Assembly (NCBI GenBank): GCA_037447605.1 | Contig: CM074809.1 | Coordinates: 3,586,689 to 3,650,688 of the forward strand | From: Zygnema circumcarinatum SAG 698-1b | Taxonomy: Eukaryota; Plantae; Zygnematophyceae | Reading direction: 5' to 3' | DNA length: 64,000 bases | Notes under the pieces: model-generated | What the model saw: the letters and a program-made list of their open reading frames with translations, nothing else | Told to the model about the DNA's origin: nothing | Databases searched by the model: none | Position numbers and translations under genes: made by a program | Shown: positions 1-51,281 of the stretch, piece after piece | Layout of the letters: every line of letters starts with the position of its first letter | Numbering within the stretch: position 1 is the stretch's first letter

Positions 1-411
1 ATCTCCATAGCGGCCGTGACGATGACGATGATGATGACGGCGATGATGGCGACGGTGGCCATATTCATACTCATCGTCGCTGCCCGAAGCTCCACCATTC
101 ATCGCCTCTTTAACATCAGCCGGTGCCTCGCTCACAGCATCCCCTCCGGCATCAGCGGTCTCGACATCATCTCCATAGCGGCCGTGACGATGATGATGAT
201 GGCGATGGTGCTCATATTGGTACCCATCATCGCTGCCTGAAACTCCATTGTCGAGCATGTTCGCATAGTTCTCATTTTCTGCTACAGCCACATCTGCATT
301 GACGCCGTCCAAGGGGCTCATCCGAGCGGATACGAGCCATGCGCTGGAGACGAGAAAAAGCCCAAACACTGCAATCACTCCCAGAGATTTCGAAGACATT
401 GACGAAGCCAT
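1..411 (-). CDS. Secreted His/Arg-rich repeat protein, 5' part (runs off window edge)
   Basis: Stop-free frame from ATG at 411 to base 1 (137 codons): MASSMSSKSLGVIAVFGLFLVSSAWLVSA|RMSPLDGVNADVAVAENENYANMLDNGVSGSDDGYQYEHHRHHHHRHGRYGDDVETADAGGDAVSEAPADVKEAMNGGASGSDDEYEYGHRRHHRRHHHRHRHGRYGD. It has a hydrophobic signal peptide, two copies of a ~55-aa unit and a TATAAATA about 125 bp upstream. Confidence 0.85.
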   Translation of the reverse strand, partial: MASSMSSKSLGVIAVFGLFLVSSAWLVSARMSPLDGVNADVAVAENENYANMLDNGVSGSDDGYQYEHHRHHHHRHGRYGDDVETADAGGDAVSEAPADVKEAMNGGASGSDDEYEYGHRRHHRRHHHRHRHGRYGD

Positions 412-533
412 TATTCCCTTCCCTTCTCTCCCCGGCACAGTTTCTGATCGTTCAAAAACGCTAACACCTTTCGGCAGACAAGTACTCTTTGCAGGCTGCA
501 CCGCTACTGCAACACACTCTCCTTCAAAGCTCT

Positions 534-668
534 TATTTATACTCGTCCGCTGCCGCCTCCACCGCCGCCTTAACGCCCTTCGCACGTGGGCATGAGGTAA
601 GCGCAACGCAGGGTGCCGATCGGCCGGACCTCTGCATGGCCCTGCATGGCCCTGCATGGCCTTGCATG
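534..668 (-). promoter_or_regulatory. Promoter of the His-rich gene: TATA box, G-box and four tandem RY (CATGCA) motifs
   Basis: TATAAATA on the minus strand at 541-534; CACGTG at 583-588; TGCATG (reverse complement CATGCA) at 633, 643, 653 and 663, an exact 10-bp period. Confidence 0.65.
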
Positions 669-1988
669 GCCGTCGGGTGCTGTCGTCGGAGGCGGCATGT
701 GGCACAGTCTTCGCGTTGACCACCCGTCCGTGACGTTACCTCTGCCTCGACGACTGGGTCGGTCATATCGTTGAATTTGACTCCCGGCCCGCCCAGACCG
801 TCCGTACAAGGCGAGCTGACCTGACGGAAGCTTCGGGGAAAGGCTGCGCGTTTACCTCTCCGCTGTGAACTTTAAGTCAAGTATCCGCCGATTAAAGTTT
901 GACACGAATGCAGATTTAACGTGGTCAAGTCCCAAACGGGTGTTGCCACGATGAAGACATGGGAACCAATCACGAGCCACCGACCACCCGTCAGCTGTGT
1001 TACTAGTGTACGCACATTGCCGAAAGGCGGCTTGTCGTTTGCTATAATCTCCATATCGCCGGTGTATCGGATCTGACGGACAGAACTTGCCGTCGCCGGG
1101 CTTCCGTCTCTGTACTTCCGCCGGCCACCCCACTGCCGGCCGTGCACGCGCCGGCGCAATGTGCCGGTAGCAGCCGGCCGGCGATGTGGCGATATATCGA
1201 CACTCATCGCAAACGACAAATGGGACTGCTCCGTCGCCCAATGGCTAGCCGATCCTGACTAGTCATTTTGACTACCAAAGAAGTCACGTCACGTCACATA
1301 ACGCAAGAGAGCCGAGGCTTGGTTGACCACTTTTGACCAAAAGAGTATGACCACCTGTTTGGATAAGTGGTCAAGTCGACTAACTAACGTGGAGGCTTCT
1401 CTCACTTCTAGCCACGCTCGTGTTGCGACGGAGTCCGTGTCAGCACGCGCTAGCGTGAAACTGAGGCCATGGAATACCATCACAAGGTTTGAATGGCGCA
1501 TGGAACACGAACAACACGAAAGTAGAAATGCCGAACATCGAACATGGGACAGCGAAATGTAAGCTACGGAATTTGAAGCTGAAACATACAGTACCCACAT
1601 GGAGCATGGAAATCGGTCATGAGGAGAACCACGAGGAGGACATAGCCTGGCAAATGGGAACACACCCAACATGGAACATGGCCCACATGGGACAGACACA
1701 ACACCATGCAATCTAAAGCATGAAAGCCAAGGTACTAACTGATGCTTTGTTGAACAACTCGGTGCGATATAGTACGAATGGCCGAGAGCTTATTCACAAT
1801 GGACCATGAGAGTACAAAAAAGGACCCAATGCCCCAAGTACACAAATTAGGGTATCCGCTCGTTAGCTGTACACGGCTGAGCTTGGACCGATTCAAAACC
1901 GACTCCCCTTATTGCCGATCGAATTTACAGATGAGGCTAATGATGTGGTCAAGAAATATTAAGGAAAGAAAAAGAATGAAAGAATGGT

Positions 1989-4157
1989 TCAGAAGTAATA
2001 TGTGGACAAGTAGGAGGAGGAAGCTCCGCTTGCAACCCATGGCGGCAGGACCTTCACCCACCCCTCCGTGACAGAATCTATGGCGTGGTCCAAAACGGCT
2101 AAGTCGATCCGGAGCTTTGCATTCCCAAGGGCCTGCATAGCGCCATGCATTGGAAAAACTTCTTTAGAAAACCTCAAACTCCTAATCTTTAAACTCTGGA
2201 ACGCTCAACCCTGAACCTTGAAACCTAAGCCTTAAAGCCTATACCCCCTAAACTATACTCAAACATAAAGAAAAACGATGGACTATATAAAACAAGGAAC
2301 AGATTATTTCAAATAGTTTGAATTGACCATTACAATTATTTTTTTGAGCTTAATAAGCGTGGCAAGATATGTAGGTGCTGAAAGAAAAAGGTACTCACCT
2401 CCACCCAGAACTCCCAATTGGAACTGTTACTTCCTCCATAATGAACTACATATGAAGGAGGCCCGTTTGCAACAGATTCAGGTGCTGCCAGGTGAAAACA
2501 ACAGAGGATGAGCCGCAAGCAAAGAAAAAAAAGCTTCTTTCTCCCTTCTCCCTCTCTTTCTCCCGCTCTCTCCCTTTCCACCTCACCTCCTTCACTCCCC
2601 CTCTCTCTCCCTCTCTCTATCTCTCGCTCTGAGTGCGAAATCTTCCAGCTACAAACTGATGCTTAATTACTAGAAATTTCTTGTTGTTGAACCAACGCAG
2701 GCAGTTTCTTGTTTTTAGGGTTTGCCCCATCTTGCTTTTCAATCATAAATACATATTTTTTAAATTCCACTCACTGGGAAGCTGTTCGTCGGCGAGAGAC
2801 CACCTCGTGAGAGGGCCCGTCACATTCAATATGGCGCACCACACTTGAGTCAAAGATCTGAAGGAGAGGGAGAGGGAGAGGGAGGGGAGAGGGAGTGGGG
2901 GAGGGAGAGGAAGAGGTTAGAAGTTTAGGGTTATCTCAGCATGGGGGTTCTGGTGCCTTCAGAACTTTTTCCAAAAATGTATGAACAACAAAAGGATGGG
3001 TTTTTACCCCAAAAAACCAATCTTCAAACCACAGCAACTGCAGACATGATCAAAGTTAAACCTTGTGGAATCTGCATTTTAAGTGGATTTAGGGTTTCCA
3101 GGCCTCACCCAAAGTTCAACTCAATGTGAATTTTTCGACGGAGATCAACTTCGCCCTTTTGGAGAGGCTGCAGCTCCGCCCCTCTCTCCAGAAGTTGCGG
3201 AAATCGGAAATTTATTTCGGAGGCATTCCACGATGGGGCTAACATTGAAAAAGAGCGATCCAAAAGATCGCTTATTGGCCAATAAGCCTGCTTTTCTCAA
3301 AACCCCAAAAACCAGAAACCCGTAAATAAAAACCCAAATCATGAATTTGAAAAAGTTGAACAGAAAGTTGTAAGACGTTTTGGTCACATGGAATCGCAAC
3401 TTTAGGTCTACATCAGATTGGCTTTAATGAAAGAAAATGTGTTAAAAACAAACGAAAAGTAATAGAACAAAAAAAAAGGGGGGGGGGGAAGGTATAAGAG
3501 GTGGAGGCACCATCATTCTTGTCCGGTCAGCAAGAAAAAGTTTCGCCTGCATTTCTTCGGGCTCCATTTTCAAAACTTCCGCCAATTGGGGCACATTTCG
3601 GAACACGAACAAAGCGTCGTTTGCGTCAGCGGTCGCAAAGTTGTGCTCCGACCACAACATGGTGCCCTCACCTGCAAAAAAGTCAACGCTTAGTCAACGA
3701 GTAGTCAACGCTACAAAATAAAAGAAAAAAAGAAAAAAACAAAAGAAAACAACAAAGAACTGTTGTCAACATGGGACAGAAGACCGTAGCCGCCCCTGAG
3801 CTCCGAAAAAAGACCCGAAATTCTCAAAAGAGTTTCTTGAATGATACGGCCCTGAAATCCTTCAACCTTTTTTTTTTTTTTTTTTTTTTTTTAGAAATTT
3901 AGTTTCTTTTTTGAAACCCTCATTTTACCTTGTGTCCAATAGATGCGCTGCATGAGAACGCGCTTTGGGGCCTCCGTACTGTACGGAAACAGGGTGCATC
4001 CGTACATTGCCGCAGCCAATGAGGTGTAGAGGAGCCCCCGGATGACGTGGGGGTGAGCCAACCAGCGGCCGACAGCTGGCACTGTCGGCGCCACCACGAG
4101 GGCGGTCATGGCGCCGGTGACGGCTGCGAAGATGACATCTGGCAGGTACGGCCCTGG

Positions 4158-4193
<36 letters not shown>

Positions 4194-5439
4194 GGGGGAG
4201 GGAGGGAGGGAGAGAGGGTGGGTGGGAGAGAGAGAAGGATGGAGGTAAGGGACAGAGAAATGGATGGGATGGAGCAGGGAAAGGAGGGCGGGAGGGAGGG
4301 AGGAAGGAAAGAGGGAGGAAGGGAGGGGAGGAGGGAGGGAGGGAGGGAGGGAGGAGGAGGGAGGGAGGGAGGGAGGGAGGGAGGGAGGGAGGGAGGGAGG
4401 GAGGGAGGGAGGGAGGGAGGGAGGAGGAGGGAGGGAGGGAGGGAGGGAGGGAGGGAGGGAGGGAGGGAGGGAGGGAGGGAGGGAGGGAGGGAGGGAGGGA
4501 GGGAGGGAGTGAGGGAGGAGGGAGGGAGGGAGGAGGAGGGAGGAAGGAGGGAGGAGGAGGGAGGGAGGGAGGGAGGGAGGGAGGGAGGGAGGGAGGAGGG
4601 AGGGAGGAGGAGGAGGGAGGGAGGGAGGGAGGGAGGGAGGGAGGGAGGGAGGGAGGGAGGGAGGAGGAGGGAGGGAGGGAGGGAGGGAGGGAGGGAGGGA
4701 GGGAGGGAGGGAGGGAGGGAGGAGGGAGGGAGGGAGGGAGGGAGGGAGGGAGGGAGGGAGGAGGGAGGAAGGAGGGAGGGAGGGAGGGAGGGAGGGAGGG
4801 AGGGAGGGAGGGAGGGAGGGAGGGAGGGAGGGAGGGAGGGAGGGAGGGAGGAGGGAAGGAGGGAGGGGAGGGGAGGGGAGGGAGGGAGGGAGGGAGGGAG
4901 GGAGGGAGGGAGGGAGGGAGGGAGGGAGAGGGAGGGAGGGAGGAGGGAGGGAGGGAGAGGGAGAGAGGGAGGGAGGGAGGGAGGGAAGGAGCGAATGAGA
5001 GAAGGAGCGAATGAGGGAGGGATGGACGGAGGGAGATTGGGAGGGGGGTAGGGGAGAAGGGAGGGTGGAAAAGGAGATAGGCAAGAAGGAACGGAGGCAT
5101 GGAGGGACGGAGGGAGATGGGGAGGGGATGGAGGGGGGGGAGGGAGAGAGGGAGAGAGGGAGAGAGAGAGAGAGAGAAGGGAGGCAGGTGGGCAGCGAGA
5201 GGAGGTGTACCCCATGGCAGCGGGTGCGTCCCGGACTGTCCCATTTTCTCCGCGAGGAACTGCGCGAAGATGGACCCGAACTGAGCGCAGTACGCGGAGG
5301 GGATGAGGGCCGGCAAGAGGTAGCCCACAAGGGACCTGCAGGGGGGACGAGCCTCGTGTTAGGGCCTCTCTCTCTCTCTCTCTCTCTTTCCCCCTCTCTC
5401 TCTCCCTCTCTCTCTCTCCCTCTCTCTCTCGCTCTCTCC

Positions 5440-5477
<38 letters not shown>

Positions 5478-6916
5478 CTGTGTCTCGCACTGTCTCTGTC
5501 TCTCTGCCACTCTCTGTGTCTCTCTCTGTTCATGTCGCCCTCTGTCTCTGTCTCTGTCTCCGTCATTTTCTGTCTCTCTCTGTCTCTATCTGTCCGTCTC
5601 TCTCTCTCTCTCTGCCCCTGCCCTATCTCTAGCTCACTCGCCCACGCGCGCTCCTCCCTCTCTCTCCGTGTGTCCGTTTTTTTTTTTTTTGCTGGCAGCA
5701 GAACATAAGCAATCGAACCTGTGGAGTCGTGGTTTGAAAAAAAAGCAGAAAACGGGACCGAAAAAAAAAAAGACATAGAGATTGGAGTTTTGAAACTTTT
5801 TTGAAACTTTTGAGGTCTTTGAGTCGACTGTGAAGGAGCCCCACTTACAGAGGTGAGTTCTGCCCGAAAAATTTCTGCCCGGAACGAAAAAAGAAAAGCC
5901 CGGGCAGCAAAAATATTGCGAGCCAAAAGGGAATGAATCCGCTGCCGGCTCCCGCCCAAGTGATCAGCTGTGACACGTGTCACACCCCATTTGTACCCTT
6001 CAGAAACTGTCAATTGGAAAACCCACATCACCCTAACATACGCTAAATTCCCTAAACCGTGAAGGTTGATAAAAGGCAAAGGAAGCAGCGGAACAATGGA
6101 AACCCTAATTCTGGAAACTGAACAAACCCTAAAATTTGAGGTATGCCCCAAAAAAAAAAAAAACTCACTATGGCAGCGAAGGCGTTGGCCCCAATGGTGC
6201 CGCCCCAATGGTTTGACCACTCGATTTTTACCTGTTCCATGAGCAAAGATCAGTTCAGTTCAGTTCAAATCCCAGTTCCAGTTCCCTTCCGTTCATTCGT
6301 TCGCTGTGTTTTGAAACAGCAGTTTCTATGCGAGGAAGGTTTCAGGAGCTTTACGGCAGATAGGTGTGAGGGTTTTGGGGAGAGGGGGAGAGGGGGAGAG
6401 GGAGGNNNNNNNNNNAGGGAGGGGGGGAGGGAGGAAGGGAGAGAGGGAGGGAGGGAGGGAGGGAAGGAGCGAATGAGAGAAGGAGCGAATGAGGGAGGGA
6501 TGGACGGAGGGAGATTGGGAGGGGGGTAGGGGAGAAGGGAGGGTGGAAAAGGAGATAGGCAAGAAGGAACGGAGGCATGGAGGGACGGAGGGAGATGGGG
6601 AGGGGATGGAGGGGGGGGAGGGAGAGAGGGAGAGAGGGAGAGAGAGAGAGAGAGAGGGAGGCAGGTGGGCAGCGAGAGGAGGTGTACCCCATGGCAGCGG
6701 GTGCGTCCCGGACTGTCCCATTTTCTCCGCGAGGAACTGCGCGAAGATGGACCCGAACTGAGCGCAGTACGCGGAGGGGATGAGGGCCGGCAAGAGGTAG
6801 CCCACAAGGGACCTGCAGGGGGGACGAGCCTCGTGTTAGGGCCTCTCTCTCTCTCTCTCTCTCTTTCCCCCTCTCTCTCTCCCTCTCTCTCTCTCCCTCT
6901 CTCTCTCGCTCTCTCC

Positions 6917-6954
<38 letters not shown>

Positions 6955-9900
6955 CTGTGTCTCGCACTGTCTCTGTCTCTCTGCCACTCTCTGTGTCTCT
7001 CTCTGTTCATGTCGCCCTCTGTCTCTGTCTCTGTCTCCGTCATTTTCTGTCTCTCTCTGTCTCTATCTGTCCGTCTCTCTCTCTCTCTCTGCCCCTGCCC
7101 TATCTCTAGCTCACTCGCCCACGCGCGCTCCTCCCTCTCTCTCCGTGTGTCCGTTTTTTTTTTTTTTGCTGGCAGCAGAACATAAGCAATCGAACCTGTG
7201 GAGTCGTGGTTTGAAAAAAAAGCAGAAAACGGGACCGAAAAAAAAAAAGACATAGAGATTGGAGTTTTGAAACTTTTTTGAAACTTTTGAGGTCTTTGAG
7301 TCGACTGTGAAGGAGCCCCACTTACAGAGGTGAGTTCTGCCCGAAAAATTTCTGCCCGGAACGAAAAAAGAAAAGCCCGGGCAGCAAAAATATTGCGAGC
7401 CAAAAGGGAATGAATCCGCTGCCGGCTCCCGCCCAAGTGATCAGCTGTGACACGTGTCACACCCCATTTGTACCCTTCAGAAACTGTCAATTGGAAAACC
7501 CACATCACCCTAACATACGCTAAATTCCCTAAACCGTGAAGGTTGATAAAAGGCAAAGGAAGCAGCGGAACAATGGAAACCCTAATTCTGGAAACTGAAC
7601 AAACCCTAAAATTTGAGGTATGCCCCAAAAAAAAAAAAAACTCACTATGGCAGCGAAGGCGTTGGCCCCAATGGTGCCGCCCCAATGGTTTGACCACTCG
7701 ATTTTTACCTGTTCCATGAGCAAAGATCAGTTCAGTTCAGTTCAAATCCCAGTTCCAGTTCCCTTCCGTTCATTCGTTCGCTGTGTTTTGAAACAGCAGT
7801 TTCTATGCGAGGAAGGTTTCAGGAGCTTTACGGCAGATAGGTGTGAGGGTTTTGGGGAGAGGGGGAGAGGGGGAGAGGGAGGGAGGGAGGGAGGGAGGGA
7901 GGAGGGAGGGAGTGGCGGAGGGAGGGAGGGAGGGAGGGAGGGGAGGGAGGGAGGGAGGGAGGGAGGGAGGGAGGGAGGAGGAGGGAGGGAGGGAGGGAGG
8001 AGGAGGGAGGGGAGGGAGGGAGGAGGGAGGAGGGAGGGAGGAGGGAGGGAGGGAGGGAGGGAGGGAGGAGGGAGGGAGGGAGGGAGGGAGGAGGGAGGGA
8101 GGGAGGGAGGAGGAGGAGGGAGGAGGAGGGAGGGAGGGAGGGGAGGGAGGGAGGGAGGGAGGGAGGGAGGGAGGGAGGAGGAGGGAGGAGGAGGGAGGGA
8201 GGGAGGGAGGGAGGGAGGAGGAGGAGGGAGGGAGGGAGGGAGGGAGGGAGGGAGGGAGGGGAGGGAGGGAGGGAGGAGGGAGGGAGGGAGAGGGAGGGAG
8301 GGAGGGAGGGAGGGAGGGAGGGGTGGAGGGAGGGTGGAGGAGGAGGGAGGGAGGGAGGGAGGGGAGGGAGGGAGGGAGGGAGGGAGGGAGGGAGGAGGAG
8401 GAGGGAGGAGGAGGAGGAGGGAGGGAGGGAGGGAGGAGGAGGGAGGAGGGAGGGAGGGAGGGAGGGAGGGAGGAGGGAGGGGAGGATGGGGAGGAGGGAG
8501 GGGAGGGAGGAGGGAGGAGGGAGGAGGGAGGGAGGGAGGGAGGAGGGAGGAGGGAGGAGGAGGCAGGGAGGAGGAGGGAGGGAGGGAGGGAGGGAGGGAG
8601 GGAGGGAGGGAGGGAGGGAGGGGAGGGAGGGAGGGAGGGAGGAGGGAGGAGGGAGGGAGGAGGGAGGGAGGGAGGAGGAGGGAGGGTGGGAGGGAGGGAG
8701 GAGGGAGGGAGGAGGGGGGAGGGGAGGGAGGAGGGAGGGAGGGAGGGAGGAGGGAGGGAGGGAGGGAGGGAGGGAGGGAGTGGAGAGAGAAAGAGAAAGT
8801 GAGAGAGAGAGCGAGAGAGAGCGCTCGCTACCTGCTCCTCCTGTGAGAGCGGCTGCCCCCCTTTCGAGTAGCCCCCTCCCTGGCGGACTGCCTGCGGGAG
8901 GAGGAGGCCCGCCATGGCTGCCGGGACGAACATGAAGACAGCGACCTCGGGACGCGCGTTCCTGCAGCAGAAAGTTAGGGTTCAGGGCCAGAATTAGGGT
9001 TAGGGTATGAAGGCAGAGGTTAGGGTTCAGGGCGAGAATTAGAGTATATTGAGCAAAGAAAGGTCTGGACTGATGCTCGCAAAGACCACTACAACCCTAA
9101 AATTTTGTATGCCTAAGGTTCATGAGTGTAAGGAGGCTACTTCCAAACCCTAACGCTTACCAGCTCATGTAACGTTTAGATGAGGAGACTCGAACTATGG
9201 CGAGAAGGACGGGAAAAACAATAGCCAGGATCCAACTCAGAACATAAAAGAATCCTCCTGCATACAATTAGGAGAGTGACGGAACCGAGCCCTGCCCGTC
9301 ATTTGGGTCAGGTGAAAAAAAAAGGCACGCCCATGTTTTAAAAAACAATCCTAAAGCCTCAAAATGACTGAAGGGAGACTCACCTGTCACGAGTTCGTCG
9401 TAGCGCTTTGCAGGAGTCTCTGCTCCGGAGGTTGCCTTAGAGGCTAAATGTGGCATAAGGGAGACGAGGCCAAAAAGGGAGAAATGGAGAGCAAATGCAA
9501 TTGGTCGGGAATAGTAAACCTGCAAAAACCCAAATCCCAAACAAAAAGCAACAAAGGTATATTGGTACAATGTGTTGAAAGCATACAGAGTATGCAAAAC
9601 AACAAACATTGAGTCTGACCCATAACCACAACATACAATAGTTCATAGTATGACTCTCTATACAATGCGAAGCATGGGAAACGAATACGACAGGCCCATG
9701 CAAGCCATGCAAAGCGGCTTAATGCCGCCTTGACGCGTCACGGCCACAGGTCGCACGGACGTCAATCGAACGGCGGAGGCGGCGGTGCGACTGAATCGGA
9801 CGGCGCGCGATAGATTCGTCGCACCCACTGTCGCCGACCGTGCGATAGGACCAATGGACGAGTCCCGCGACCTATGCGACGATCCATGCGACGCCCGTGC

Positions 9901-11390: not shown

Positions 11391-14300
11391 CTGGGCAATG
11401 ACGGTGGACATTGGAGCGACGGCTGACTCTCCGTACACTCGAGAAGGCCACGTGCCCGGTCCTGATTGGACCACAGTATCTGCCCCCATCCAAACAAGCA
11501 AACTCAAAAAAATAAAAATAAATAAAACAAGCATTTTGAGGTTTGAAGGGAAATGAAAGGACCTCAAATTCCCTACTATGGTTGCATTAAAAAGGGGTCA
11601 AAAACGGAAGAAAAGGATTACCCGGTAAAGCACTCCCGGATGCCTCCAAATTGATCATTGCTCCCACTTGCTCGGCCCACGGATGCGTCTTCACAAAACC
11701 GTGAACTGCCTGCGAGGAGACCAATACATGCTAATTCATGGCTAATTCATGGCTAATTCATGGCTAATTCATGGCTAATTCATGGCTAATACATGGCTAA
11801 TTCATGGCTAATTCATGGCTAATTCATAGCTAATTCATGGCTAATTCATGGCTAATACATGGCTAATTCATAGCTAATACATGATGCCATTTGGATGGAG
11901 TATAAGGGTTTAGGTTAGAGTGACAAAGCCCTAAGGCTGAGTCATGGAAGGTTCTTGGGGATTTGATGATAGCCCGGGGTGGCAAAGCTTCAAAAAATTA
12001 GGGTTTTTATGGCATGTCCATTTCCCATGCAACTCACCTTGAGGAAAATTTCCTCTCCTCCGTTGAACAAAAAGATCACCGGCGCCGACGGGATGTAGTC
12101 CGAATCCACAATTTGGCGCAGGACTTCCAGCATGCATGCTGCAGTTCCATGCAGTTCCCACCGTTCAAGTGAATCAGTTTAGGCTTTCCAGAACAGCAGT
12201 GAGCTCTAGTTTGCACAGAAAATATGCAAGTCTGGACTTCTTAAAAATGCAAAACCTCAGATTTAGAGATCTCTTTGAGCCACTGACTCAGCACAATCTC
12301 CTCCCCTTCCCCGGCCTCCTTCCTACCCCTCTCTCCCCTACCTTTTCACATCCTGTCTCTCTCCCCCGTTCCCCCTCTCTTTCATCTCCCTCCCTCTCTC
12401 CTCATTCTCCGCCTTCCCTGTCTCTCTCCATCAAGCCACAACTACGACATCCATTCGTGTATCCCTTCACAAAATCCCTCTATCTCCTCCCTTTGGGCAG
12501 GCAAAACATTTCATCAATGCATCCCCCCTCTCTTCTCTCTTATCTCTTCTCTCTCTCCTCTCCCTCTATCTTACTCTCTCCCCCCCTCTCCCTCTCTCTT
12601 TCCGCCCTATCTCTCTCCTCCCTCTCCCTCAATCTCTCCCCCCTCCCGCCCTCTTTTTATCTCCTCCCTCTCTCCAGACAGGCAAAACATTTTGAGCTGA
12701 CCGACGCATGCAGCGCAGTCGCTGGCCCCCGGGGAATGCAGGCCCGAATCGAAGTGGCCATTCACAAGAACAGCCGCTCTATCGGGAGCGGAATTTGCAG
12801 CCGAAATTCTGGCATAGAATAGGATAGACATTAGCATCAAACGTTTAGAACTTTTAGAACTTTGAACTCCTTCCTCTCTCACCACTCTCCCACCCCCACT
12901 CTCTCTGTGCGTCTACATGTGCTTTCTCTCTGCGTCCTCAATACATGCCTCTCCGTCTGCCTCGTTCCTCTCTCTCCGCCCTCAGTCGGTGCTCTCGTCC
13001 TCTTCATCTACCTCTCCACTTCCTTTTTCAGTAGATGGTCTCTCCCCCTCCGTTTACTTCTCCGACTTCTCTACAATTGTTGCTCTCTCGCTCTCCCGCT
13101 GCCCGTCTACCTCCTACCGTCTTTCCTCCCTCTCTCGAGTGGATCCCTCTCTCTCCCCCTCTACCTCTCCTCCCCGTCTCCGGTTGTTGCTCTCTCCATC
13201 TCCTCCCCCTCTCCTGCTCTCGCCTTTTCCTATTGTTGCTCTCTCCTTCTCCCACTCCTCACCCTCTCCACTTGTTGCTCTCTCCCTCGACCTCTCTGTC
13301 TACCTCCCCCCCCCTCGCCACCCGCAATAGCCATTCTCTCCCTCTTCCCCTTTCTTCTCTGTTGTCACCCCTTGTCCTTCCCTCGCCCCTCTAATCCAAC
13401 TCTAATTCAAATGCGCCTTTTTCTATGACATAAACCACCACAATGCCAAACCTATTCAGAAAAAACCGACCAGTTTTCAGTTTTTGTCCGCAAACCTGAC
13501 GGCGATGTTTGTGATGTTCTGGTACGCCATCGTGACAGTTCGCGTCACGAAGGCGGGAAGGTTAAAGGACCCGCTCACCAGGGACTCGTCGATTTCAAAT
13601 CTGACAGCCTCAAAATTTACACCCCGGGGCTCCATTTTTAATTCATACATACAGTTAATACATCCCTAAAAGACGTAAGTGCGGAGGGAAGATGCCATCG
13701 GTCCGAGTCTTAGAACTCCAAGTTTGGAGAGCGATAAGTTCCTAAGCGAATTGATGGAAACTAGGTCGCATTTGTCTGGTCTGTTTAGTTCGTTTAGCAT
13801 TCAAAGAAGACCCCTACTCCTTGCGGTTATGATTATCTCCTATTCCGTGGCTCAATAGTATACTAAAAAAAAAAGGGTAAAGAAAGTAGAATGCAACGAT
13901 TATCTTTCACATATACCTCAACTTGGAGCTTGCCCTCTCCTTTAATTTTTCAACTTCTGATTTCAAATAGTTTTTCGCTTCCAACAGTCCCGGAGAACCC
14001 TCCTGCATCACCACAAAGGTGATTTATACCCGTCAAACATTTCTAAATTGAACATTCGTTGATGTTTATTTTGTGTTTCATTCCTTCCAATTTTTTCTTT
14101 TCGTCAGACGAAGATGTTAATGGGCATGCGGCTTTAGTAAATTTAAAATTTCAAGTTTCTTGACGGGGTTCAATTGAATAGACTTCGGCCCTAAGCACGC
14201 GAGAGAGAGAGAGAGGGGGGGAGGGAGAGGGAAAGGGTGCTTCCGGCTGCACCTGGCGGCCTCCAATGTCCCCCGCCAGACGCTCCACGTGGCGCATGGC

Positions 14301-14555: not shown

Positions 14556-14867
14556 GGCCTGTGGGGGGGAGAGAAAGGAGAGGAAGGAGCAAGGTGGACG
14601 AGAGAGGGAGGGAGGGAGGGGGGGCAGGAAGAGGGGAGGTGGGAGAGAGACAGCGAGAAGGGGTAGAAAAGTGGGAAAAAGAGAAAAGAGGATCGAAGGA
14701 GAGAGGGAGCGAGTGGAGGAGGGGCGGAAGAGAGGGGGAGGGACTTACTAGAGAGGGAGAGGAAGAGGAAGAGGGAGAGGGCGAGAGGGAGGGGGAGGGG
14801 GCGCGAGCGCGAACGCGTCGCTCTAAGCGAGCTTTCCTGGAACGGTCGCTTGAGGGAAAGGGTGTCC

Positions 14868-14955
14868 GTACATATGTATGTTTTCGTACGCCAATGTACG
14901 GCAGCTTACTGTACATGTTTACGTACAGTACAGTACGGGCCGTATGAAACTGTAC
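14868..14955. promoter_or_regulatory. GTAC-core cluster in the ERMP1/FMO divergent promoter
   Basis: 8 GTAC sites in 88 bp (14868, 14886, 14896, 14911, 14923, 14928, 14933, 14952). GTAC is the SBP-domain core site. Confidence 0.5.
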
Positions 14956-15072
14956 GAACAAATCAACGGAACGACAACAGACTGAGCCGCACGGAGCCTC
15001 GGAGGGAGGCATTACTCCGGCAAGGCTGCCACGTGGCGGCTTCCCGGGCCCCCTCGCCCTCGCACGTGCGAC

Positions 15073-18000
15073 ATGGCGGCAGCGTCCCTCTCCCTCCTCC
15101 CTTTGCGCTCTTGCGCTGCCATGGCTGCCCTCCCCCCCTCCCCCGTCCCCTCCCCCTCCCCCTCCCCCTCCCCTCCCCCCCGCCCCCTCCCCCTCCCCTC
15201 CCCCTCCCCCCCCCCCGCCATGGCTCCCACTCCCTGAAGGTCGCCGTCATCGGCGCTGGCGCCGCCGGGCTCGTCGCCGCCCGGCAGCTGCTCCGCGAGG
15301 GCCACCACGTGGCCGTCCTGGAGCAAGGCTCCCGCGTGGGCGGCACGTGGCAGTACGAGGAGCGCGCGGAGAGCGACCCCCTCTCGCGCGCGCCCTCGCG
15401 GGAGCGCGTCCATGGCAGCATGTACGCGAGCTTGCGCACGAACCTCCCGCGGGAGGTCATGGCGTTCAGGGACTTTCCGCTGTCAGTTTCAGTTCCAGTT
15501 CCAGTTGCAGTTGCAGTGGACGGGCGACGGTACTGCTCGCATGGAACGGTGGCGCGGTATCTGGAGCGCTTCGCGGAGGTGTTCGGGGTGTTGCCGCACG
15601 TGCGGTTCGGGAGGAGGGTGGAGGTGGTGGAGCCGGCGGAGGGGGGGAAGGCAGGAGGGGAAGGGTTTAGGGTTTTGGAGGGCGGGGGGAGGGGGGTGGA
15701 GAAGGGGGAAGGGTTTAGGGTTTTAAAGGGCGGGGGGAGGGGGGAGTGGGTCAAGTGGAGAGTGGCCAGTAGGGAGGTGACATTTGGCAGTGCGGTGGAG
15801 GAGGTGTATGATGCTGTGGTGGTCTGCAATGGACATTTTTCTGAACCCAAGATTGCTGATATTGCAGGTACTGTTTACTAGGGGGTGTTCAGGGTTTAGG
15901 GTTCTGGCTTCAAGTTTCAGAGTTCAGGGTGTAGAGTTGGCGTTCAAGGTTAAGGGTTCAGGTTGCAAGGTTTAGTTATCAGGTTGTAGAGTTTAGGGTT
16001 CAGGGTTTAGGGTTCAGAGTGTAGAGCTTAGGATTTGGATTTAAAGTTCAGGGTTTCTGGTTAGGGTTCAGGGTTCAGGGTTCAAGTTTAACCAAATGAA
16101 TTCTGTTTTTGGCGCAAGGTTCAACGTCTTGAAGGCTTGAGATTTAAGAACTCTTGAGGGTGTAGGGTTCAGAGTTTGAGGCTTCAAGAGTTAGGGTGTG
16201 CAGTTGGGGCCCAGGGTTGAAGGTTCTGATCCGGACTGCAGTGTTTTTTTAAAAAGAATGTCGAGGTTGAGCGTTGCAGGGTTCAGGTTTTATGTTGAAA
16301 GGGTTCATGGTTTCAGGGTTTTGTCTCTCACTTTCACTCTCTCTCTCTCTCTCTCTGTGCGGAGGGAGGGAGAGCAGGACTCAGTGAGTGGCCGGGCCGC
16401 CAAATGCACAGCCACAACTACCGCCGCCCTGAACCCTTCGCCGGACTTGTAAACTTCTCCGCCTGCTCTGAAATCCCTCCATAAATCCTTCGTCTCTCAC
16501 CACCTTGAGACAGAGAGAGAGAGAGAGGGGGGAGGGGGAGGAGGGAGGGGGAGGGAATCTCTCACATGAGACAGAGAGAGTGGGAGGGGCGGAGGGGGAG
16601 GGAATCTCTCACCATCCTTTGCAGCCCTAAGCCCTGACAAAACATTCGCAACCCTAATGACCCTACAACCTTGTAGCCTTAAACAATAGACCCCTGCAGG
16701 GGCTGAAACCCTAACCCTAAATTTCGTGCCGCGAGGATGCAGAGCAGGTGGTAGTGGTGGTGGGAGCGGGCAGCAGCGGGGAGGACATTGCCAGGGAGGC
16801 AGCCATGGCTGCTCGGGAGGTCCACATGTGCGCGCGCAGCTGGCCAGGTGCGGGAGGGGGAGGCTCGCCCTCTCCCACTCCCTCTCCCTCTCCCTCTCCC
16901 TCGCCGGGAGGGAAATATAAGAATCTGTGGCGACATCCCATGGTAAGAGAGGAGATGGAAGAACTGTGTTTGCCAGGGAGGGTTTGATTGGTTTTAGGGT
17001 TGCAGGTATTTTGGGGTTTGTAAGGATGTTAGGTTTTCTAAGATCTGAATTTCTGGGCCGTGAGAGATGTGTGCAGGCAGTGAGAGCGCATGCGGACGGA
17101 AAGGTTGAGTTTGCTGACGGCGTCTCAGTCGTTGCTGACGTCATTCTGCACTGTACTGGGTGAGAGTTTTTTTTTTTTTTTTGCTTTATGTTGTTAGTCT
17201 TGTGCACGTATTTACAAACTGCGTCGTTTTTCAGCCACGACATACTTTCGTTTTCTATTTTTTTTTTTCTTTGTCGAACAATTGATGAATGCTCTACAGA
17301 GAGCGAGCTAAAATGAGAGAGAGAGGGGGGAGAGAGGGAGTGATGGGCAGGTACATGTATCACTTCCCCTTCCTGAGGGGCATTGACCACTGCGTCAAAG
17401 TCTCTGACTCGCGTGTGGGACCACTCTTTGAGCATGTTTTCCCACCGACTTTGGCTCCCACTCTCTCCTTTGTGGGCCTCCCCTGGCAGGTAGAGAGAGA
17501 GGCCCTCCCACTGCATGCATGCATGTATGCATGCATGTACACTCTCTCTCTCTCGTACTCTCATGTTTTTCCATTCTTTTCAAAAAGGTCAATCTAAGAA
17601 TCTCTCTCTTTCTCTCTCCCTCTCTCCCTCTCCCTCTCTACCTTTCTCCCTATTTATAAGCACACCTCATGGTTCTCACGGACCTTGAGCGCATGTGATT
17701 TGTTAGAAGTCCTTAAGGGAGAGTTGATACCAAGGATATGAGCACACTGCAGGTGGCTCCGTTTCCCCTTATGGAGATTCAAAGCACGTGGATTGCGAAA
17801 GTGCTTTCAGGAAGTGTGGGGTTACCTTCGAGGGAAGAGATGGAGTCTGAAATTGAAACCTTCTATAAGCGAATGGAGGAGGCAGGCCTCCCGCAACGCT
17901 TCACTCACTCTATGGGGAAAACTGCCGTAGTGGGCCAGGTGCAGTGAACCTGCAACCCTATAAGCAGCTCTACTTTTCTGTAAGCATTTGTGCTCGTTTG

Positions 18001-19566: not shown

Positions 19567-20945
19567 TCAAGTCCAGCAGTAAGTCTTACAATCTACGGAA
19601 CCTTTGCTACCTAGATCTACATCTACGGCGACATTTACAGATCTAATGGCAAAAGCTGCCACTGGAAACAACCTCCAGTTCGTCCAGACTGGCTTAGCAC
19701 AAGGCAGTTGGTAAACTCTGAGAGACAGCTCGTCCTCATCTGGTTGCCCGCATGCAGCTCCATTTGTTGAAAAAGGCCTACTTTCCCTAAAGTACCTAAC
19801 TGACAAACTAACAAAGTAGCTAACTATCTAATCAACTAGCTAGCTGATTACCTAATTACTGATCGATTGACTGACTGGCTGCCTAGCTAATAACTTATCA
19901 ACTAAACCCTAGGACCAAACTCAAAAGAAACCTGACTGAATGATTGTGATTTGGAGTCCTGCTGGCCCGTCCACCTCTCAGCTGCAGCACGCAGCTGTGT
20001 TTGTATGGAACGGACAAGAAAGGGAGGGAGGTGAGGAAGTAGGGACTGAATTACTGGAGACTCTAGGAATCTACTGCGAGTTCTTCAATGGATGCGTTCG
20101 TCTAATGGTTCTCTACTGCCGCCGCATGCAGCTATCCGAAAAGCCTCGGCCTGCTCTAAATAGGATGCAACTACTCGCTCTGAGTAGAAGGAATAACCAA
20201 CAACTTGCTCGTCTAGAAAAAATCTCTCCTCACCTACTCCCAAGTGGGGTCCCGCGTAACCCTCCGCCTAAGCACGGTACACGTCGAGAGGGTGATGTCG
20301 ATTTTGACGCTGTTGAAATATACCTGCAGAGCAAAACATGCCAAAAGGGAACCAGAAAAGCCAAGCGCAACGCTTAGTATGCTTTTGAGAACAATCGGAT
20401 GATCCAGGCAACAAGAGCGGAGAGGGAGGGACAGGGAGGGGCAGAGGGAGAGGGAGAGGGAGAGGGAGAGAGCGCGGAGGAGGGGCCCTCACCGTCTCCA
20501 GGCAGCGGCTCTTGCAGGCAGTGGCCGGCCATGTACCGGAGAGCTGGCACCTCAAAATTTGCAAGTCTCAGTTCCCCGCCGGGAAGGTCTCCCTCTGCCT
20601 CTCCCATTCCGCCGCTTCGCCGCTGCATCCTCACACATAACAGCGGTAAGGGTTCCATTTAAGGTTGTTCCATGCGAAATTGGAAGCTTGTTTGAGTGTC
20701 CTCCTCACTGCCTGCTTCTCAATTCTGCGCGCTAAGTTCAAGGTTCAGGCGATTCCGATGCAAAAAAATCAGATTCTTTGGCCTCGGAGGGTGAAGAGAG
20801 CGCTCACATCATAGGTCAGTGGTGAAGCTGGAACTGGGAGCTGCGTCAGGAGGGGATGNNNNNNNNNNCTCACACTGTGAGCAGATGCAGGAGGAGAGAG
20901 GAGAGCTGTCAGGAGGAGGCGGCAACCATGGCGGGCTGCCGCCAT
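19567..20945 (-). pseudogene. Possible small orphan gene or pseudogene fragment, interrupted by a gap
   Basis: ccATGGC at 20945 starts MAAARHGCRLLLTALL (signal-peptide-like). Several AG/GT-bounded segments follow (~20840-20808, ~20610-20490, ~20325-20240, ~19790-19567), but I could not build one clean reading frame or recognise a family. Confidence 0.3.
20859..20868. other. Scaffold gap (10 N)
   Basis: N run. Confidence 1.
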
Positions 20946-21428: not shown

Positions 21429-24400
21429 TCACAGCCGGGCCCCGACGGGGGCCTCGCGATGGGTAGGGCTCCGCCCCATGCTGAGGGAGGGGAGAGAGGG
21501 GAGGGGAGAGGAGGGGGGAAGGGGAGANNNNNNNNNNTTCAAGTTGGTCTTCTTGAACTGCGCTTGGTCCTTCTTGAACCACTTGGCGAGCAGGGCCAAA
21601 CACGTGTCGCCAGAGGCCACCGTGAAGACGGTCTTCGAGCTCCCCGTGCAGGCCCGCGCAATGGCCTCAAATGTGGTCGCCGAAGTGCATATCTGGGAAA
21701 TAAACAACCTCAACCAATGATATGGCAGGAGCAAAAGCAAGGGAAGCGAAAGTTGTTTCTTGTACGGAGTCTCTTTCTAAAACCTAAACAGCAATGGTGA
21801 CATTCCTCATGGCATCGGTTCTCTGGATTCAGATCGCAGAGTTTACGCAGCTTTACAAGTGTGAAATTGGCACAGGTGAGTGAATGGCCGCTTACCTCTT
21901 GCCCAAACGGAACAACACCACTCGTTGGAGGAACGAGGCGTGCGCAGTTGATGGCGGGGTTCACGGCATAGAACTTGGCGGCGGTTCCGTTGAACAGCGA
22001 CGTGACAATGCTTGCACACGTGTCACTCGCGCCGGCAACATACGATGCGTTGCAGAGCGGATTCTCCAATGGCGTGCCTCGCGTGATGCAAATCTGGAGG
22101 GTAATATTGTGAGAAAACTTCAACGATGGCGCCAAACATGGGTTTAAGTCGCTTGGAAAGAAAGCTGACTAATCCGACACTTTGAAAGAATCATCATTAC
22201 GATGTCCACTACAAGATGCTGAAATGGTGGTCATAATGCAGACCTTCGGTAGCCGAATTTGGTAACAAACCTGCTTTCCTCCCTGCAACGGGTTTGTGCA
22301 ATTGAGATTAGGGTTCTGGGAGTTTGTTCCCCCGAGGACTGTGCCAGCAGGGAGGTTGAAGAGGGCAGCAATGGAGGTGCATGTGTCGCCCTGCAGGAAA
22401 GATCAAAGCAATGGTCATATCAAATGACACAGAATTGAACAGAGAAGTTTCCAAAAGCGTCTAACGACATCCATGATGATGAATCGACAAAACGAATTCG
22501 TTCGTCAAAACCAACTGTCAACTGATTACCGGTCAAAATATCGAAAACCAGAGAATAGACAATACCTGATTGATAGTGTACGGGAGCGAACAGCTCCATG
22601 AGTTTGTGATGTTTATCAGAGTCGAGGCAGGGAGGACATTTGAGCAGTTAACACTCTGCAATCGCCGACAAACAAACATGTGTCAAATTCAAAAGTCAAG
22701 GAACTCAATGCATTCCAATGCTGGCAACAAAGATGTTCGCGGGTCGGGCTGCAATTTACGAAACAGACAATACAAAAAGACCAATCTCGGCCATAGACAC
22801 TCACTGGACGCTGCTGACGTATGAAGGCGGAGATGCTGATGCCATGCACATCCGCCAAGAGGTCGCAAGTCACTATCGGACCGGCAGGAACACTGAAGCT
22901 CTGAAGGCCCTGCAGAGGGGGCACACCTGCACAATGGCGGGACATAGAATGTTATTTCCTGCATCACATTTCTAAGGAAACAGGAAACCATCAACCTTCT
23001 TCAGAGCAGACAGTTTCGTTAAGTTTCAGTTCTTCCGTTTGCACTTTGAACATTACTTTTCGCGAGGATGTAGTCGGCGACAATGGTACATCGGAATCTG
23101 GCAAAGCTGCTTGGGACGAATGTTCTAGAGGGTTCTTGAAGTGGCATGAGGAAGCCTACCAGAGCGACACGTGGCACTACCGTCAAGGGTGTACTGAGAG
23201 AGGCTAAACCCCGAGGGGCAGAGACACGTGTACGCGCCGGAGGAGCTGCTGATGTCGAGGCACAGTCCAACGCCGCACGGGTTGGAAGAAAAGGACGCAC
23301 AAGTTGACGCTGCAGACATTAAAGAAAGAAATAGGGGGGAGGAGCGGCGAGAGGGGGGAGAGGGCGTAAAAGAGAGAGAAGGAGAGGACGAGAGAGAGAG
23401 AGGTGGGTTAAGAGGACGAGAGAGTGGGAAGGAGAGACAGTCTTCTCAGAACGAACCATCTTATTCACGCCCTACGCATGATGAGAGCCGTGCTGCATAC
23501 TGCTAGGGTGCTGTTACTTTCTAGAGTTTTTCAGGGTTTGTCAACGTTACATAACTTCACTAGATCATATCAGCACTACCCAACATGCTATGAAGATGGG
23601 CTTACCGGGAATGCAGGTCTGGGAGCCATCGCTGTTGTTGGCGGCAGCGAAGTCGGCGGGGCACAAGCAAACATTGGTGAGGCCGGAGACGGTGCATGTT
23701 CCCCCCCCGCAAGGGTTGGAGGTCCCCGCTCCCACACTGTTGTTGGGGAGCTTTATGGCGCCATAGCTATTGGAGCCGCAGGGGTTGCTTCCTGCATGCA
23801 GATGACGACAAGGAGTCATAAAAAAGGAATTGAAATAGTAATTTAATTTGGAATTACATTACTGTGGGTGTTCTCATGCTTGGTTGAATTTGCAGCACAA
23901 CAACTTATATTCGTAAACGAACAGGGAAATAGCGAAAAAATGCCCCCAGAGGAGCTGGCGGAGCCTCTCACCCTTGACAATGGGAACAAGAGCAGGAGTG
24001 CTAAACATTCCACACGTGCCCACTCCTCCTCGGATGGAGATTCGCATGAACCCTCCCTCACCCCAATTGATGCCCCAAGAATTTTTTATCAACATATACG
24101 GAGGAGTTGTTGTCAGATTGTAGCCTAGCACCACCACATTGTGGTTCACGCCACTCTTATAGCATGTGGGGTTGTCATAGATATAGCCCTGCACATTTAC
24201 AAGGAAAGTGTAAGCTCGATTCTCGTACTACGGAACAAAAATATAAAGGACGTGTAATTTCGAAAATTATCACATAGTGAATATGGTTTTTGTTGTAAGG
24301 AGGTTTCCAGGTTCATCTTTCAGGTTATCCCTTTATGCTTGTAGGGATCGCTCGCTTGTAGTGAATGTAGCATTCCTCACCCCCTTGTAGTCGATGAAGG

Positions 24401-51209: not shown

Positions 51210-51281
51210 TGTAGCCCTATATTGCCTCCCTCCCTCCCTGCCTATCTTTCCCTCTCTCCCTTTCTCAGTATCGCAGCAGCC

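What the first reader, a model, noticed from the sequence alone, without database searches (positions are those of the whole stretch)
1..411. Hidden secreted His/Arg-rich multi-repeat precursor protein
The minus-strand frame is open to the window edge, so the ORF track misses it. It encodes a signal peptide (VSA|R) and repeats of acidic spacer + NGxSGSDDxYxY + H/R run + HGRYGDD. This alternating acidic/basic layout resembles a multi-unit peptide precursor or a metal-binding or wall-coacervating protein. The DD-x-Y-x-Y context recalls tyrosine-sulfated plant peptides such as phytosulfokine (DYIY), but that link is speculative. I recognise no family.
Basis: partly seen in the sequence, partly recalled or inferred. 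Interest (0 to 1): 0.75.

Follow-up and report, generated by a model that had tools for sequence, protein, structure and literature searches.

The report
Secreted histidine-rich algal repeat protein
The window edge cuts through what looks like a real algal gene for an exported, floppy protein built of alternating acidic stretches and tyrosine plus histidine/arginine blocks; it has no true relatives, most resembles animal cuticle repeat proteins in layout, and its function is untested.

Summary
On the minus strand, an ATG at 411 opens a frame that runs off the window at base 1 (137 codons). It encodes a signal-peptide-like N-terminus and two repeats. Each repeat is an acidic spacer, then SDD-x-Y-x-Y, a His/Arg run and HGRYGD. 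A TATA box, a G-box and four 10-bp-phased CATGCA elements lie just upstream.

No family was found in Pfam, PDB sequences, the ESM Atlas, two word searches, a metagenome scan or an exhaustive phmmer search of 1.84 billion proteins. The only hits are three fly GYR/YLP-motif repeat proteins. Those scores are sums of many weak matches (7 bits or less each), so they show shared motif and layout, not homology.

The phytosulfokine link fails: no tyrosine follows Asp, the motif of known plant sulfated peptides. Cutting into peptides is neither shown nor excluded.

My best reading is a lineage-restricted wall or mucilage matrix protein. Its computed net charge flips from about +11 at pH 4.5 to about -8 at pH 7.5, and its tyrosines could cross-link.

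Expression, the C-terminus and the function are unverified. The scan read this same stretch in the neighbouring window, and it noted similar acid/base block-repeat genes elsewhere in this genome.

The parts
1..411 (-). Partial coding sequence (137 codons) from the ATG at 411-409; it runs off the window at base 1
   Evidence: Start context AATAATGGC (A at -3, G at +4).
325..411 (-). Signal-peptide-like N-terminus, residues 1-29. Possible cleavage after Ala29 (VSA|R) or Ala24 (SSA|W).
   Evidence: Hydropathy. AlphaFold helix 7-30, the only confident part of the model. Coordinates checked.
235..324 (-). Acidic spacer 1, residues 30-59 (net charge about -4, no His)
166..234 (-). Tyr plus His/Arg block 1, residues 60-82: SDDGYQY, a 12-residue run with 7 His, then the RYGDD end
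79..165 (-). Acidic spacer 2, residues 83-111 (net charge about -5, no His)
1..78 (-). Tyr plus His/Arg block 2, residues 112-137: DDEYEY, a 16-residue His/Arg run, then RYGD; cut by the window edge
412..510 (-). Inferred 5' untranslated region. The start of transcription, about 30 nt below the TATA box, is inferred and not shown. No ATG lies in this stretch.
   Evidence: no ATG between 533 and 412
534..541 (-). TATA box (TATAAATA), 123-130 nt upstream of the ATG
583..588 (.). G-box palindrome CACGTG
632..671 (-). Four copies of a 10-bp tandem unit, each holding CATGCA (RY element core), at 633, 643, 653 and 663. An in-frame ATG lies at 657-655.

Best explanation
This is the 5' part of a real, lineage-restricted gene of a streptophyte alga. 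It encodes an exported, intrinsically disordered tandem-repeat protein, a block polyampholyte with a period of about 51-56 residues.

Each repeat joins an acidic spacer to a block that begins with a Y-x-Y motif. The block continues with a run of 12-16 His/Arg residues and ends in R-Y-G-D-D.

I think it acts whole in the cell wall or mucilage and is not a hormone precursor. At acidic wall pH the His runs are protonated, so the protein is a polycation that can bind de-esterified pectin or other anionic polymers. Near pH 6 the net charge crosses zero, and acid-base self-association, condensation or His-metal (Zn/Cu/Ni) bridging become possible. The three Tyr per repeat are candidate sites for peroxidase-driven cross-linking that would make the protein insoluble.

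Shown here: the ORF, the promoter-like elements, the signal-like N-terminus, the repeats, the charge switch (a computed value) and the lack of relatives.

Inferred: export, disorder, polymer or metal binding, cross-linking, and expression itself.
For: Gene-like anatomy:
- TATAAATA lies 123-130 nt upstream, and no ATG lies between it and a start codon in good context.
- The N-terminus looks like a signal peptide.
- The repeat score is far above shuffles: 121 against a maximum of 78.

Charge: computed net charge of the mature part is +11.5 at pH 4.5, +4.7 at pH 5.5, -3.1 at pH 6.5 and -8.1 at pH 7.5. The two His/Arg runs alone carry +8 to +14 at pH 5.5.

Disorder: the AlphaFold single-sequence model has no secondary structure and pLDDT of about 50 after residue 57.

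Nearest look-alikes: the only hits among 1.84 billion proteins are secreted fly GYR/YLP repeat proteins. They share the order acidic spacer, DDGY-x-Y, basic run, and have a 54-56 residue period. The match depends on residue order: 57-60 bits against 8 or less in 200 shuffles.

Literature on analogues:
- GYR/YLP motifs mark arthropod cuticle proteins (PMC2932725).
- Nematode epicuticlins have a signal peptide and 49-51 residue disordered repeats in which SGYR, a basic RKKR block and AYGDE follow one another. They are insoluble, with dityrosine detected in the epicuticle (PMC9612446).
- His-Tyr peptides of squid beak proteins phase-separate (PMC6884462, title and abstract).
Against: - There is no transcript, proteomic or localisation evidence.
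- The C-terminal part of the protein lies outside the window.
- There are no relatives, so conservation cannot argue for function.
- GC3 is 0.47, lower than in three neighbouring coding exons (0.55-0.85).
- The protein lacks the Pro/Hyp motifs of plant wall structural proteins (2 Pro in 108 mature residues).
- The likeness to cuticle proteins rests on a short motif plus layout. Each single repeat match is 7 bits or less, and the Pfam GYR model does not hit the protein.
- The hydrophobic N-terminal stretch (about 18 residues) could also be a signal anchor.
- An in-frame ATG at 657-655 would bury that stretch if transcription started further upstream.
Confidence: 0.4

Rival explanations
1. Multi-unit precursor of histatin- or shepherin-like cationic His-rich defence peptides. 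The acidic spacers neutralise the basic units during export. Extracellular proteases then release peptides of about 20-26 residues, which act on microbes, probably helped by Zn or Cu and by low pH.
For: - The layout is signal peptide plus alternating acidic and basic units.
- Several basic peptides from one transcript are known in plants: Ib-AMPs, and shepherins I and II, which are Gly/His-rich and come from one 120-residue precursor (PMC4695807).
- A review on zinc and antimicrobial peptides (PMC10004757) mentions both histatins and shepherins. That they are Zn-linked His-rich antimicrobial peptides is from my own knowledge.
- Scan notes describe other export-tagged acid/base block-repeat genes in this genome (unchecked leads).
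Against: - No recognisable processing sites flank the blocks. The RR pairs lie inside block 2 and would split it.
- The conserved SDD-x-Y-x-Y and RYGDD ends make each 'unit' carry its own acidic residues: block 1 is only +4 at pH 5.5 and about -2 at pH 7.5.
- There is no homology to any known antimicrobial peptide.
Confidence: 0.2
2. A secreted metal buffer or store. The His runs chelate Zn, Cu or Ni in the wall or mucilage to detoxify or scavenge metals, with no structural role.
For: - Runs with 7 His in 12 residues and 8 His in 16 residues. Such runs bind Ni, Zn and Cu in vitro (general chemistry, my own knowledge).
- Scan notes report other His-rich small proteins in this genome that were read as metal binders (unchecked).
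Against: - At wall pH of 5.5 or below, His is largely protonated and binds metal poorly.
- The interleaved Arg, the conserved Tyr motifs and the acidic spacers are not explained by chelation alone.
- There is no metal-responsive element or expression data.
Confidence: 0.15
3. Not a working gene. It is a chance or very young open frame in which slippage of CAT/CGT codons made the His/Arg runs. It is not expressed, or is expressed without function.
For: - No relatives anywhere.
- Low-complexity codon runs: TRF finds a 15-bp repeat at 17-55.
- GC3 is below that of neighbouring exons.
- No expression evidence could be obtained.
Against: - The TATA box, clean leader, good start context and signal-peptide-like N-terminus occur together.
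- The two repeats keep the same protein motifs while differing in synonymous codons (GAT/GAC, TAC/TAT, TCA/TCG) and in run length.
- An open frame of at least 137 codons is not rare in 64 kb, but this combination of features is.
Confidence: 0.17
4. Precursor of tyrosine-sulfated signalling peptides, phytosulfokine-like.
For: Acidic residues sit next to Y-x-Y (DDGYQY, DDEYEY) in a secreted protein.
Against: - None of the 7 Tyr follows Asp. The DY dipeptide is the conserved sulfation motif of all known plant sulfated peptides except GLV9 (PMC11534595 and PMC12637578).
- The repeat layout with long His/Arg runs is unlike the short single-peptide precursors.
- PMC12637578 describes plant TPST as conserved from angiosperms to mosses. 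Its presence in this alga was not tested.
Confidence: 0.03
5. A true homologue, by descent or transfer, of the ecdysozoan GYR-motif and epicuticlin repeat proteins.
For: - phmmer whole-sequence E-values of 2.7e-10 to 8.5e-4 to three fly GYR/YLP proteins.
- The match depends on residue order.
- Similar period and motif order.
Against: - The score is the sum of up to 13 repeats of one weak match, each 7 bits or less.
- The Pfam GYR and YLP models do not hit the protein.
- There is no YLP motif. His is 14% of the mature part here, against 0.1-0.5% in the fly proteins.
- The lineages are very distant, and short Tyr motifs in disordered repeats arise easily by convergence.
Confidence: 0.03

Closest known systems
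Dipteran GYR/YLP-motif repeat proteins (Pfam PF02756 and PF02757; here P0001 Cochliomyia, P0002 Episyrphus, P0003 Musca), of the arthropod cuticle-associated motif class
   Same: Signal peptide. Tandem repeats of 54-56 residues. Each repeat runs acidic or neutral spacer, then DDGY-x-Y, then a basic run, then D-V-S/E. They are the only hits in 1.84 billion proteins.
   Different: The basic run is Arg/Lys with furin-like RxKRR sites and almost no His. They carry YLP motifs and 5-8% Pro, both lacking here. The Pfam GYR model does not hit the algal protein. Each single repeat match is 7 bits or less. They come from animals.
Nematode epicuticlins (Asu-EPIC-1 and relatives; PMC9612446)
   Same: Signal peptide. 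Disordered tandem repeats of 49-51 residues. Three Tyr per repeat, in the order G-Y, basic block, Y-G-D plus an acidic residue (SGYR-KKR-NNAYGDE, against GYQY-His/Arg run-RYGDD). A GYQY variant of the motif is mentioned in the paper. Proposed function: dityrosine-linked insoluble surface matrix.
   Different: The basic block is only 4-6 Lys/Arg and has no His run. The whole protein is acidic (pI 4.28). They come from animals.
Plant wall proteins with Tyr cross-link motifs or His stretches (extensins, AtAGP31)
   Same: Secreted. Y-x-Y type Tyr motifs, and cationic or His stretches thought to pair with pectin (PMC4132260).
   Different: No Ser-Pro/Hyp repeats, no PAC domain and no predicted glycomodules. 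Only 2 Pro in the mature part.
His-rich cationic peptides and multi-unit plant peptide precursors (histatins, shepherins, Ib-AMPs)
   Same: His/Arg/Gly/Tyr-rich cationic stretches. Several basic units encoded in one secreted precursor (PMC4695807).
   Different: No sequence similarity, no Cys motifs (Ib-AMP), no GGH repeats (shepherin), and no evident processing sites.
Squid beak histidine-rich proteins (HBPs)
   Same: Secreted disordered His/Tyr/Gly-rich repeats with pH-dependent phase separation (PMC6884462).
   Different: HBPs lack the acidic spacers and Arg. There is no sequence relation.

Membership tests
Pfam GYR motif (PF02756) | Match to the 18-residue GYR profile at or above its gathering score (20.6 bits) | tested here: not met
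   hmmscan of the 137-residue protein against Pfam-A at E up to 10 found 0 families. The three fly hits score 182-416 bits.
Pfam GYR motif (PF02756) | Sequence similarity to proteins that carry the motif | tested here: inconclusive
   phmmer E-values are 2.7e-10 to 8.5e-4 and depend on residue order. But each score is the sum of up to 13 matches of 7 bits or less.
Pfam YLP motif (PF02757) | Y-L-P-P type motif in each repeat | tested here: not met
   No Pfam hit. No YLP in the sequence.
Nematode epicuticlins | Signal peptide followed by tandem repeats of about 50 residues that cover the mature protein | tested here: met
   Signal-like N-terminus, then repeats with motif spacings of 51 and 56 residues. 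Only two repeats are visible in the window.
Nematode epicuticlins | Conserved YGD and GYR tyrosine motifs in each repeat | tested here: inconclusive
   YGD is present in both repeats (RYGDD, RYGD). In place of GYR the motifs are GYQY and EYEY. The motif definitions are from PMC9612446.
Nematode epicuticlins | Insoluble, dityrosine-containing surface layer | not testable with these tools
   Needs biochemistry.
Plant tyrosine-sulfated peptide precursors (PSK, PSY, RGF, CIF) | Asp directly before the sulfated Tyr (DY motif) | tested here: not met
   The contexts of the 7 Tyr are NY, GY, QY, RY, EY, EY and RY; there is no DY. The motif is from PMC11534595 and PMC12637578.
Plant tyrosine-sulfated peptide precursors (PSK, PSY, RGF, CIF) | A TPST enzyme in the same genome | not tested
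   Only this window could be read.
Extensins and other hydroxyproline-rich wall glycoproteins | Ser-Pro(3-5) or other Pro/Hyp-rich repeats | tested here: not met
   2 Pro in 108 mature residues.
Extensins and other hydroxyproline-rich wall glycoproteins | Y-x-Y cross-link motif | tested here: met
   YQY and YEY, one per repeat. That Y-x-Y is the isodityrosine motif is from my own knowledge. Tyr cross-linking of extensins is in PMC4132260.
Multi-unit antimicrobial peptide precursors (Ib-AMP type) | Several basic peptide units separated by acidic propeptides in one secreted precursor | tested here: met
   Layout and charges. This is a likeness of layout only.
Multi-unit antimicrobial peptide precursors (Ib-AMP type) | Release of the units by proteolysis; the Cys motifs of Ib-AMPs | tested here: not met
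   No Cys in the protein (composition of the mature part). No flanking processing motif is seen. Cleavage itself cannot be tested here.

The most novel reading that the evidence does not exclude
Streptophyte algae close to land plants make a so far undescribed class of exported block-polyampholyte repeat proteins. This His/Arg-Tyr type is one member; the Lys/aromatic and poly-Arg types that the scan noted elsewhere in the same genome are others. The His/Arg-Tyr type has arrived independently at the ecdysozoan cuticle design: Tyr motif, basic block, YGD, acidic spacer, with a period of about 50 residues. The proteins form a pH-switched, tyrosine-cross-linked wall or mucilage matrix. They are switched on with desiccation or dormancy genes through RY and G-box promoter elements.
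Probability: 0.12. Interest if true: 0.7.

Novelty: new variant of a known kind. Interest (0 to 1): 0.42.

Why it matters
If the gene is expressed, it adds a non-proline, histidine-based type to the wall and mucilage proteins of the algae closest to land plants. Its charge reverses within the physiological wall pH range, which is a simple physical switch for binding and releasing pectin or metals.

The layout parallels animal cuticle repeat proteins. That would be a clear case of convergent design in extracellular matrices.

Together with the other acid/base block-repeat genes noted in this genome, it could define a lineage-specific toolkit for surviving drying or for defence. As it stands it is an orphan, low-complexity, partly seen gene with no expression data, so the value is that of a lead.

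Tried and rejected
- **Pfam scan:** nothing.
- **PDB sequence search:** the best hits end at the extreme C-terminus of chains such as RNA polymerase beta'. I take them for matches to poly-His tags and reject them as noise.
- **ESM Atlas:** no usable hit.
- **Word-index protein search with the 137 residues:** nothing. It covers candidates of 75-240 aa.
- **Same search with the longer stop-free reference 1-735, scoring only residues 109-245:** nothing. It covers candidates of 135-429 aa.
- **Exhaustive phmmer search:** only the three fly proteins. I rejected them as homologues after looking at the per-repeat scores.
- **Metagenome scans by protein and by an exact 28-mer:** nothing.
- **Attempt to reach the DNA left of the window:** I looked for the neighbouring nucleoside-transporter-like gene (exon 3930-4154) in the protein collection, to fetch its contig. 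There was no hit at all, not even to itself. It therefore looks as if the collection lacks this genome's proteins. If so, the missing self-hit for our ORF says nothing about annotation or expression.
- **Scan-notes look-up by sequence:** blank.
- **Plus-strand ORF 16-240 (Met/Thr-rich):** rejected as the mirror image of the CAT/CGT codon runs.
- **Bacterial promoter and terminator scan:** irrelevant for a eukaryotic locus.
- **Dehydrin/LEA reading:** rejected. I saw no Lys-rich segment, and the protein has an export signal (my own reading of the sequence).

Full report
**What is there.** Read on the minus strand, bases 411-1 form an open frame of 137 codons that starts with ATG and runs off the window without a stop. 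The ORF listing omits ORFs that run off an end of the source, so none from 411 is listed.

**N-terminus.**
- It has one Lys, a strongly hydrophobic core at residues 9-21 and then small residues.
- No signal-peptide predictor is available here, so export is inferred.
- The stretch could also be a signal anchor.

**Repeats.**
- The mature part consists of two repeats, residues 30-83 and 84-137.
- They align with a score of 121, against a mean of 40.7 and a maximum of 78 in 1000 shuffles.
- Each repeat has four parts:
  - an acidic spacer without His (net -4 to -5);
  - SGSDD followed by Y-x-Y (GYQY, then EYEY);
  - a run of 12 or 16 residues made almost only of His and Arg;
  - HGRYGD(D).
- The last copy is cut by the window edge.
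- The two copies differ in synonymous codons and in run length but keep the motifs.

**Is it a gene?**
- *For.*
  - TATAAATA lies at 541-534, which is 123-130 nt upstream of the ATG.
  - No ATG lies in between.
  - The start context is AATAATGGC.
  - A CACGTG G-box lies at 588-583.
  - A perfect 10-bp tandem repeat at 632-671 holds four CATGCA (RY) cores at 633, 643, 653 and 663.
- *Cautions.*
  - CATGCA is over-represented across the whole window (63 found, 25 expected), and a 10-bp tandem array can arise by slippage. The RY elements are therefore a lead, not a finding.
  - The frame stays open for 108 codons upstream and holds one in-frame ATG at 657-655, inside the RY array. If transcription started above it, the hydrophobic stretch would be internal.
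  - GC3 (0.47) is lower than in three neighbouring coding exons (0.55-0.85).
- *Limits.* I could obtain no transcript evidence. The 3' part of the gene lies outside the window. Another first-stage note on the same stretch, read in the neighbouring window, gives it 900 letters in all; I could not check this.

**Relatives.**
- Pfam gives nothing at E up to 10.
- The best PDB sequence hits end at the extreme C-terminus of the chains. I read them as matches to poly-His tags.
- The ESM Atlas gives no usable hit.
- The word-index search found nothing for candidates of 75-240 aa. Using the longer stop-free reference 1-735, it also found nothing for 135-429 aa.
- Two metagenome scans were blank.
- The exhaustive phmmer search of 1.84 billion representatives returned three proteins. 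All are from flies: Cochliomyia, Episyrphus and Musca. All are made of Pfam GYR and YLP motifs.
- No streptophyte protein was hit, not even the query's own product.
- A neighbouring, clearly real exon gave no hit at all in the word search, not even its own product. This is the nucleoside-transporter-like exon at 3930-4154 with good splice sites. So this genome's proteins seem not to be in that collection. If that is so, the missing self-hit says nothing about annotation or expression.

**What the fly hits mean.**
- The match is not compositional. The real query scores 57-60 bits against P0001, while 200 shuffles of the mature part give at most 8 bits.
- The alignment shows that the total is the sum of up to 13 repeats of one weak match, each 7 bits or less. 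The matched piece is spacer, then (A/S)DDGY-x-Y, then the start of a basic run.
- The fly repeats have a period of 54-56 residues. The algal motif spacings are 51 and 56.
- The fly proteins have almost no His (0.1-0.5%), carry YLP motifs and 5-8% Pro, and their basic runs are Arg/Lys.
- I conclude that this is a shared motif order and period, most likely convergent, and not family membership.

**Literature on these motifs.**
- Nematode epicuticlins are signal peptide plus disordered tandem repeats of 49-51 residues with three Tyr motifs.
- In epicuticlins the repeat junction reads SGYR, then a KKR-type basic block, then AYGDE. They are insoluble, with dityrosine detected in the epicuticle (PMC9612446).
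- The algal block reads GYQY or EYEY, then a His/Arg run, then RYGDD. That is the same order, with a much longer and His-based basic block.

**Physical properties.**
- With standard pKa values, the visible mature part has a net charge of +11.5 at pH 4.5, +4.7 at pH 5.5, -3.1 at pH 6.5 and -8.1 at pH 7.5.
- The His/Arg runs alone carry +8 and +14 at pH 5.5.
- The protein therefore changes sign within the range of wall pH.
- A single-sequence AlphaFold model shows a confident helix only for the signal peptide, a low-confidence helix at 34-57, and no structure beyond, with pLDDT of about 50. This fits disorder, but a single-sequence model is weak evidence.

**Interpretation.**
- I favour an intact extracellular matrix protein (confidence 0.4):
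  - a pH- and metal-switchable binder of anionic wall or mucilage polymers;
  - Tyr residues that could be oxidatively cross-linked.
- Plant precedents for the single elements exist:
  - peroxidase-driven Tyr cross-linking of extensins;
  - ionic extensin-pectin pairing;
  - binding of polygalacturonic acid by AtAGP31, 'probably through its His-stretch' (PMC4132260).
- His/Tyr-rich squid beak peptides phase-separate (PMC6884462).
- The precursor reading (0.2) has precedents in Ib-AMPs and in the Gly/His-rich shepherins (PMC4695807). However, I see no processing sites around the blocks, and the only RR pairs lie inside block 2.
- A pure metal-buffer role (0.15) overlaps with the favoured reading.
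- The non-functional ORF reading keeps 0.17 because expression is unproven.
- The phytosulfokine-type reading drops to about 0.03:
  - The DY dipeptide is conserved in all known plant sulfated peptides except GLV9 (PMC11534595 and PMC12637578).
  - None of the seven Tyr here follows Asp.

**Context from the scan's own notes (unchecked leads).**
- The same stretch was flagged in the neighbouring window.
- Its promoter (TATA, G-box, four RY) was flagged separately. I confirmed those elements.
- About 398-443 kb away on the same piece, other export-tagged acid/base block-repeat genes were reported. They have Lys/aromatic blocks or runs of 13-17 Arg, and a first-reader note describes cationic precursors there as interleaved with Em-type LEA genes.
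- If these notes hold, the present gene is one more member of a recurring design in this alga. The RY and G-box promoter would fit a drying or dormancy programme.
- I could not read those loci, and a look-up by sequence was blank.

**Verdict.**
- The gene is an orphan with no family. Its closest likeness is in design to ecdysozoan GYR/YGD cuticle repeat proteins and, element by element, to plant wall proteins and His-rich peptides.
- I rate it a new variant of a known kind (secreted disordered repeat matrix or peptide proteins) and of moderate interest.
- It is limited by the truncated view and by the lack of expression data.
No sequence was altered or joined.

Noticed in passing
window 632-671, 583-588 and 534-541: The promoter of this gene has four CATGCA (RY) cores spaced exactly 10 bp apart inside a perfect 10-bp tandem repeat, then a CACGTG G-box and TATAAATA. 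In seed plants this combination is typical of maturation and desiccation genes (my own knowledge). CATGCA is also 2.5-fold over-represented across the whole window (63 found, 25 expected).
   Followed up: partly
window 3930-4154 (minus strand), and probably about 3520-3672: An internal exon with a clean acceptor (ttccag|G) and donor (CAAG|gtaaaa). Its product resembles nucleoside-transporter (PF01733) clusters in the ESM Atlas, at a score of 0.80 only, so it is a lead. A further likely exon follows downstream. No matching protein, its own product included, was found in the protein collection.
   Followed up: partly
window 4162-5188 and 7859-8789; 5366-5613 and 6843-7090: Two (GGAG/GAGG)n microsatellites of about 1 kb each, and two (CT)n arrays with identical TRF statistics. 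This suggests a duplicated segment of about 1.5 kb in what may be introns of the transporter-like gene. The strong GC skew at 4-10 kb comes from these repeats.
   Followed up: no
window 6406-6415, 20859-20868, 21528-21537 and 58972-58981: Four runs of exactly 10 N, which look like assembly gaps. One of them (21528-21537) lies inside the LRR-EGF-papain-LysM gene span (21429-33701) noted by others.
   Followed up: no
window about 15240-15630 (plus strand): The open frame 14850-15881 holds an FMO-like, FAD/NAD(P)-binding N-terminal domain (Pfam PF00743, E 5e-15). It may be a flavin monooxygenase gene.
   Followed up: no
window 51222-52172 (plus strand): A long exon matches Pfam SURNod19 (stress up-regulated Nod 19, E 1.7e-76), a family I know mainly from plants.
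   Followed up: no
window 11730-11883: Fourteen copies of an 11-bp tandem unit, GCTAATTCATG (93% matches).
   Followed up: no
window about 1284-1306 (minus strand): A tandem GTGACGTGACGTGAC (ACGT-core, bZIP-type site look-alike) lies about 880 bp upstream of the His-rich gene's ATG.
   Followed up: no
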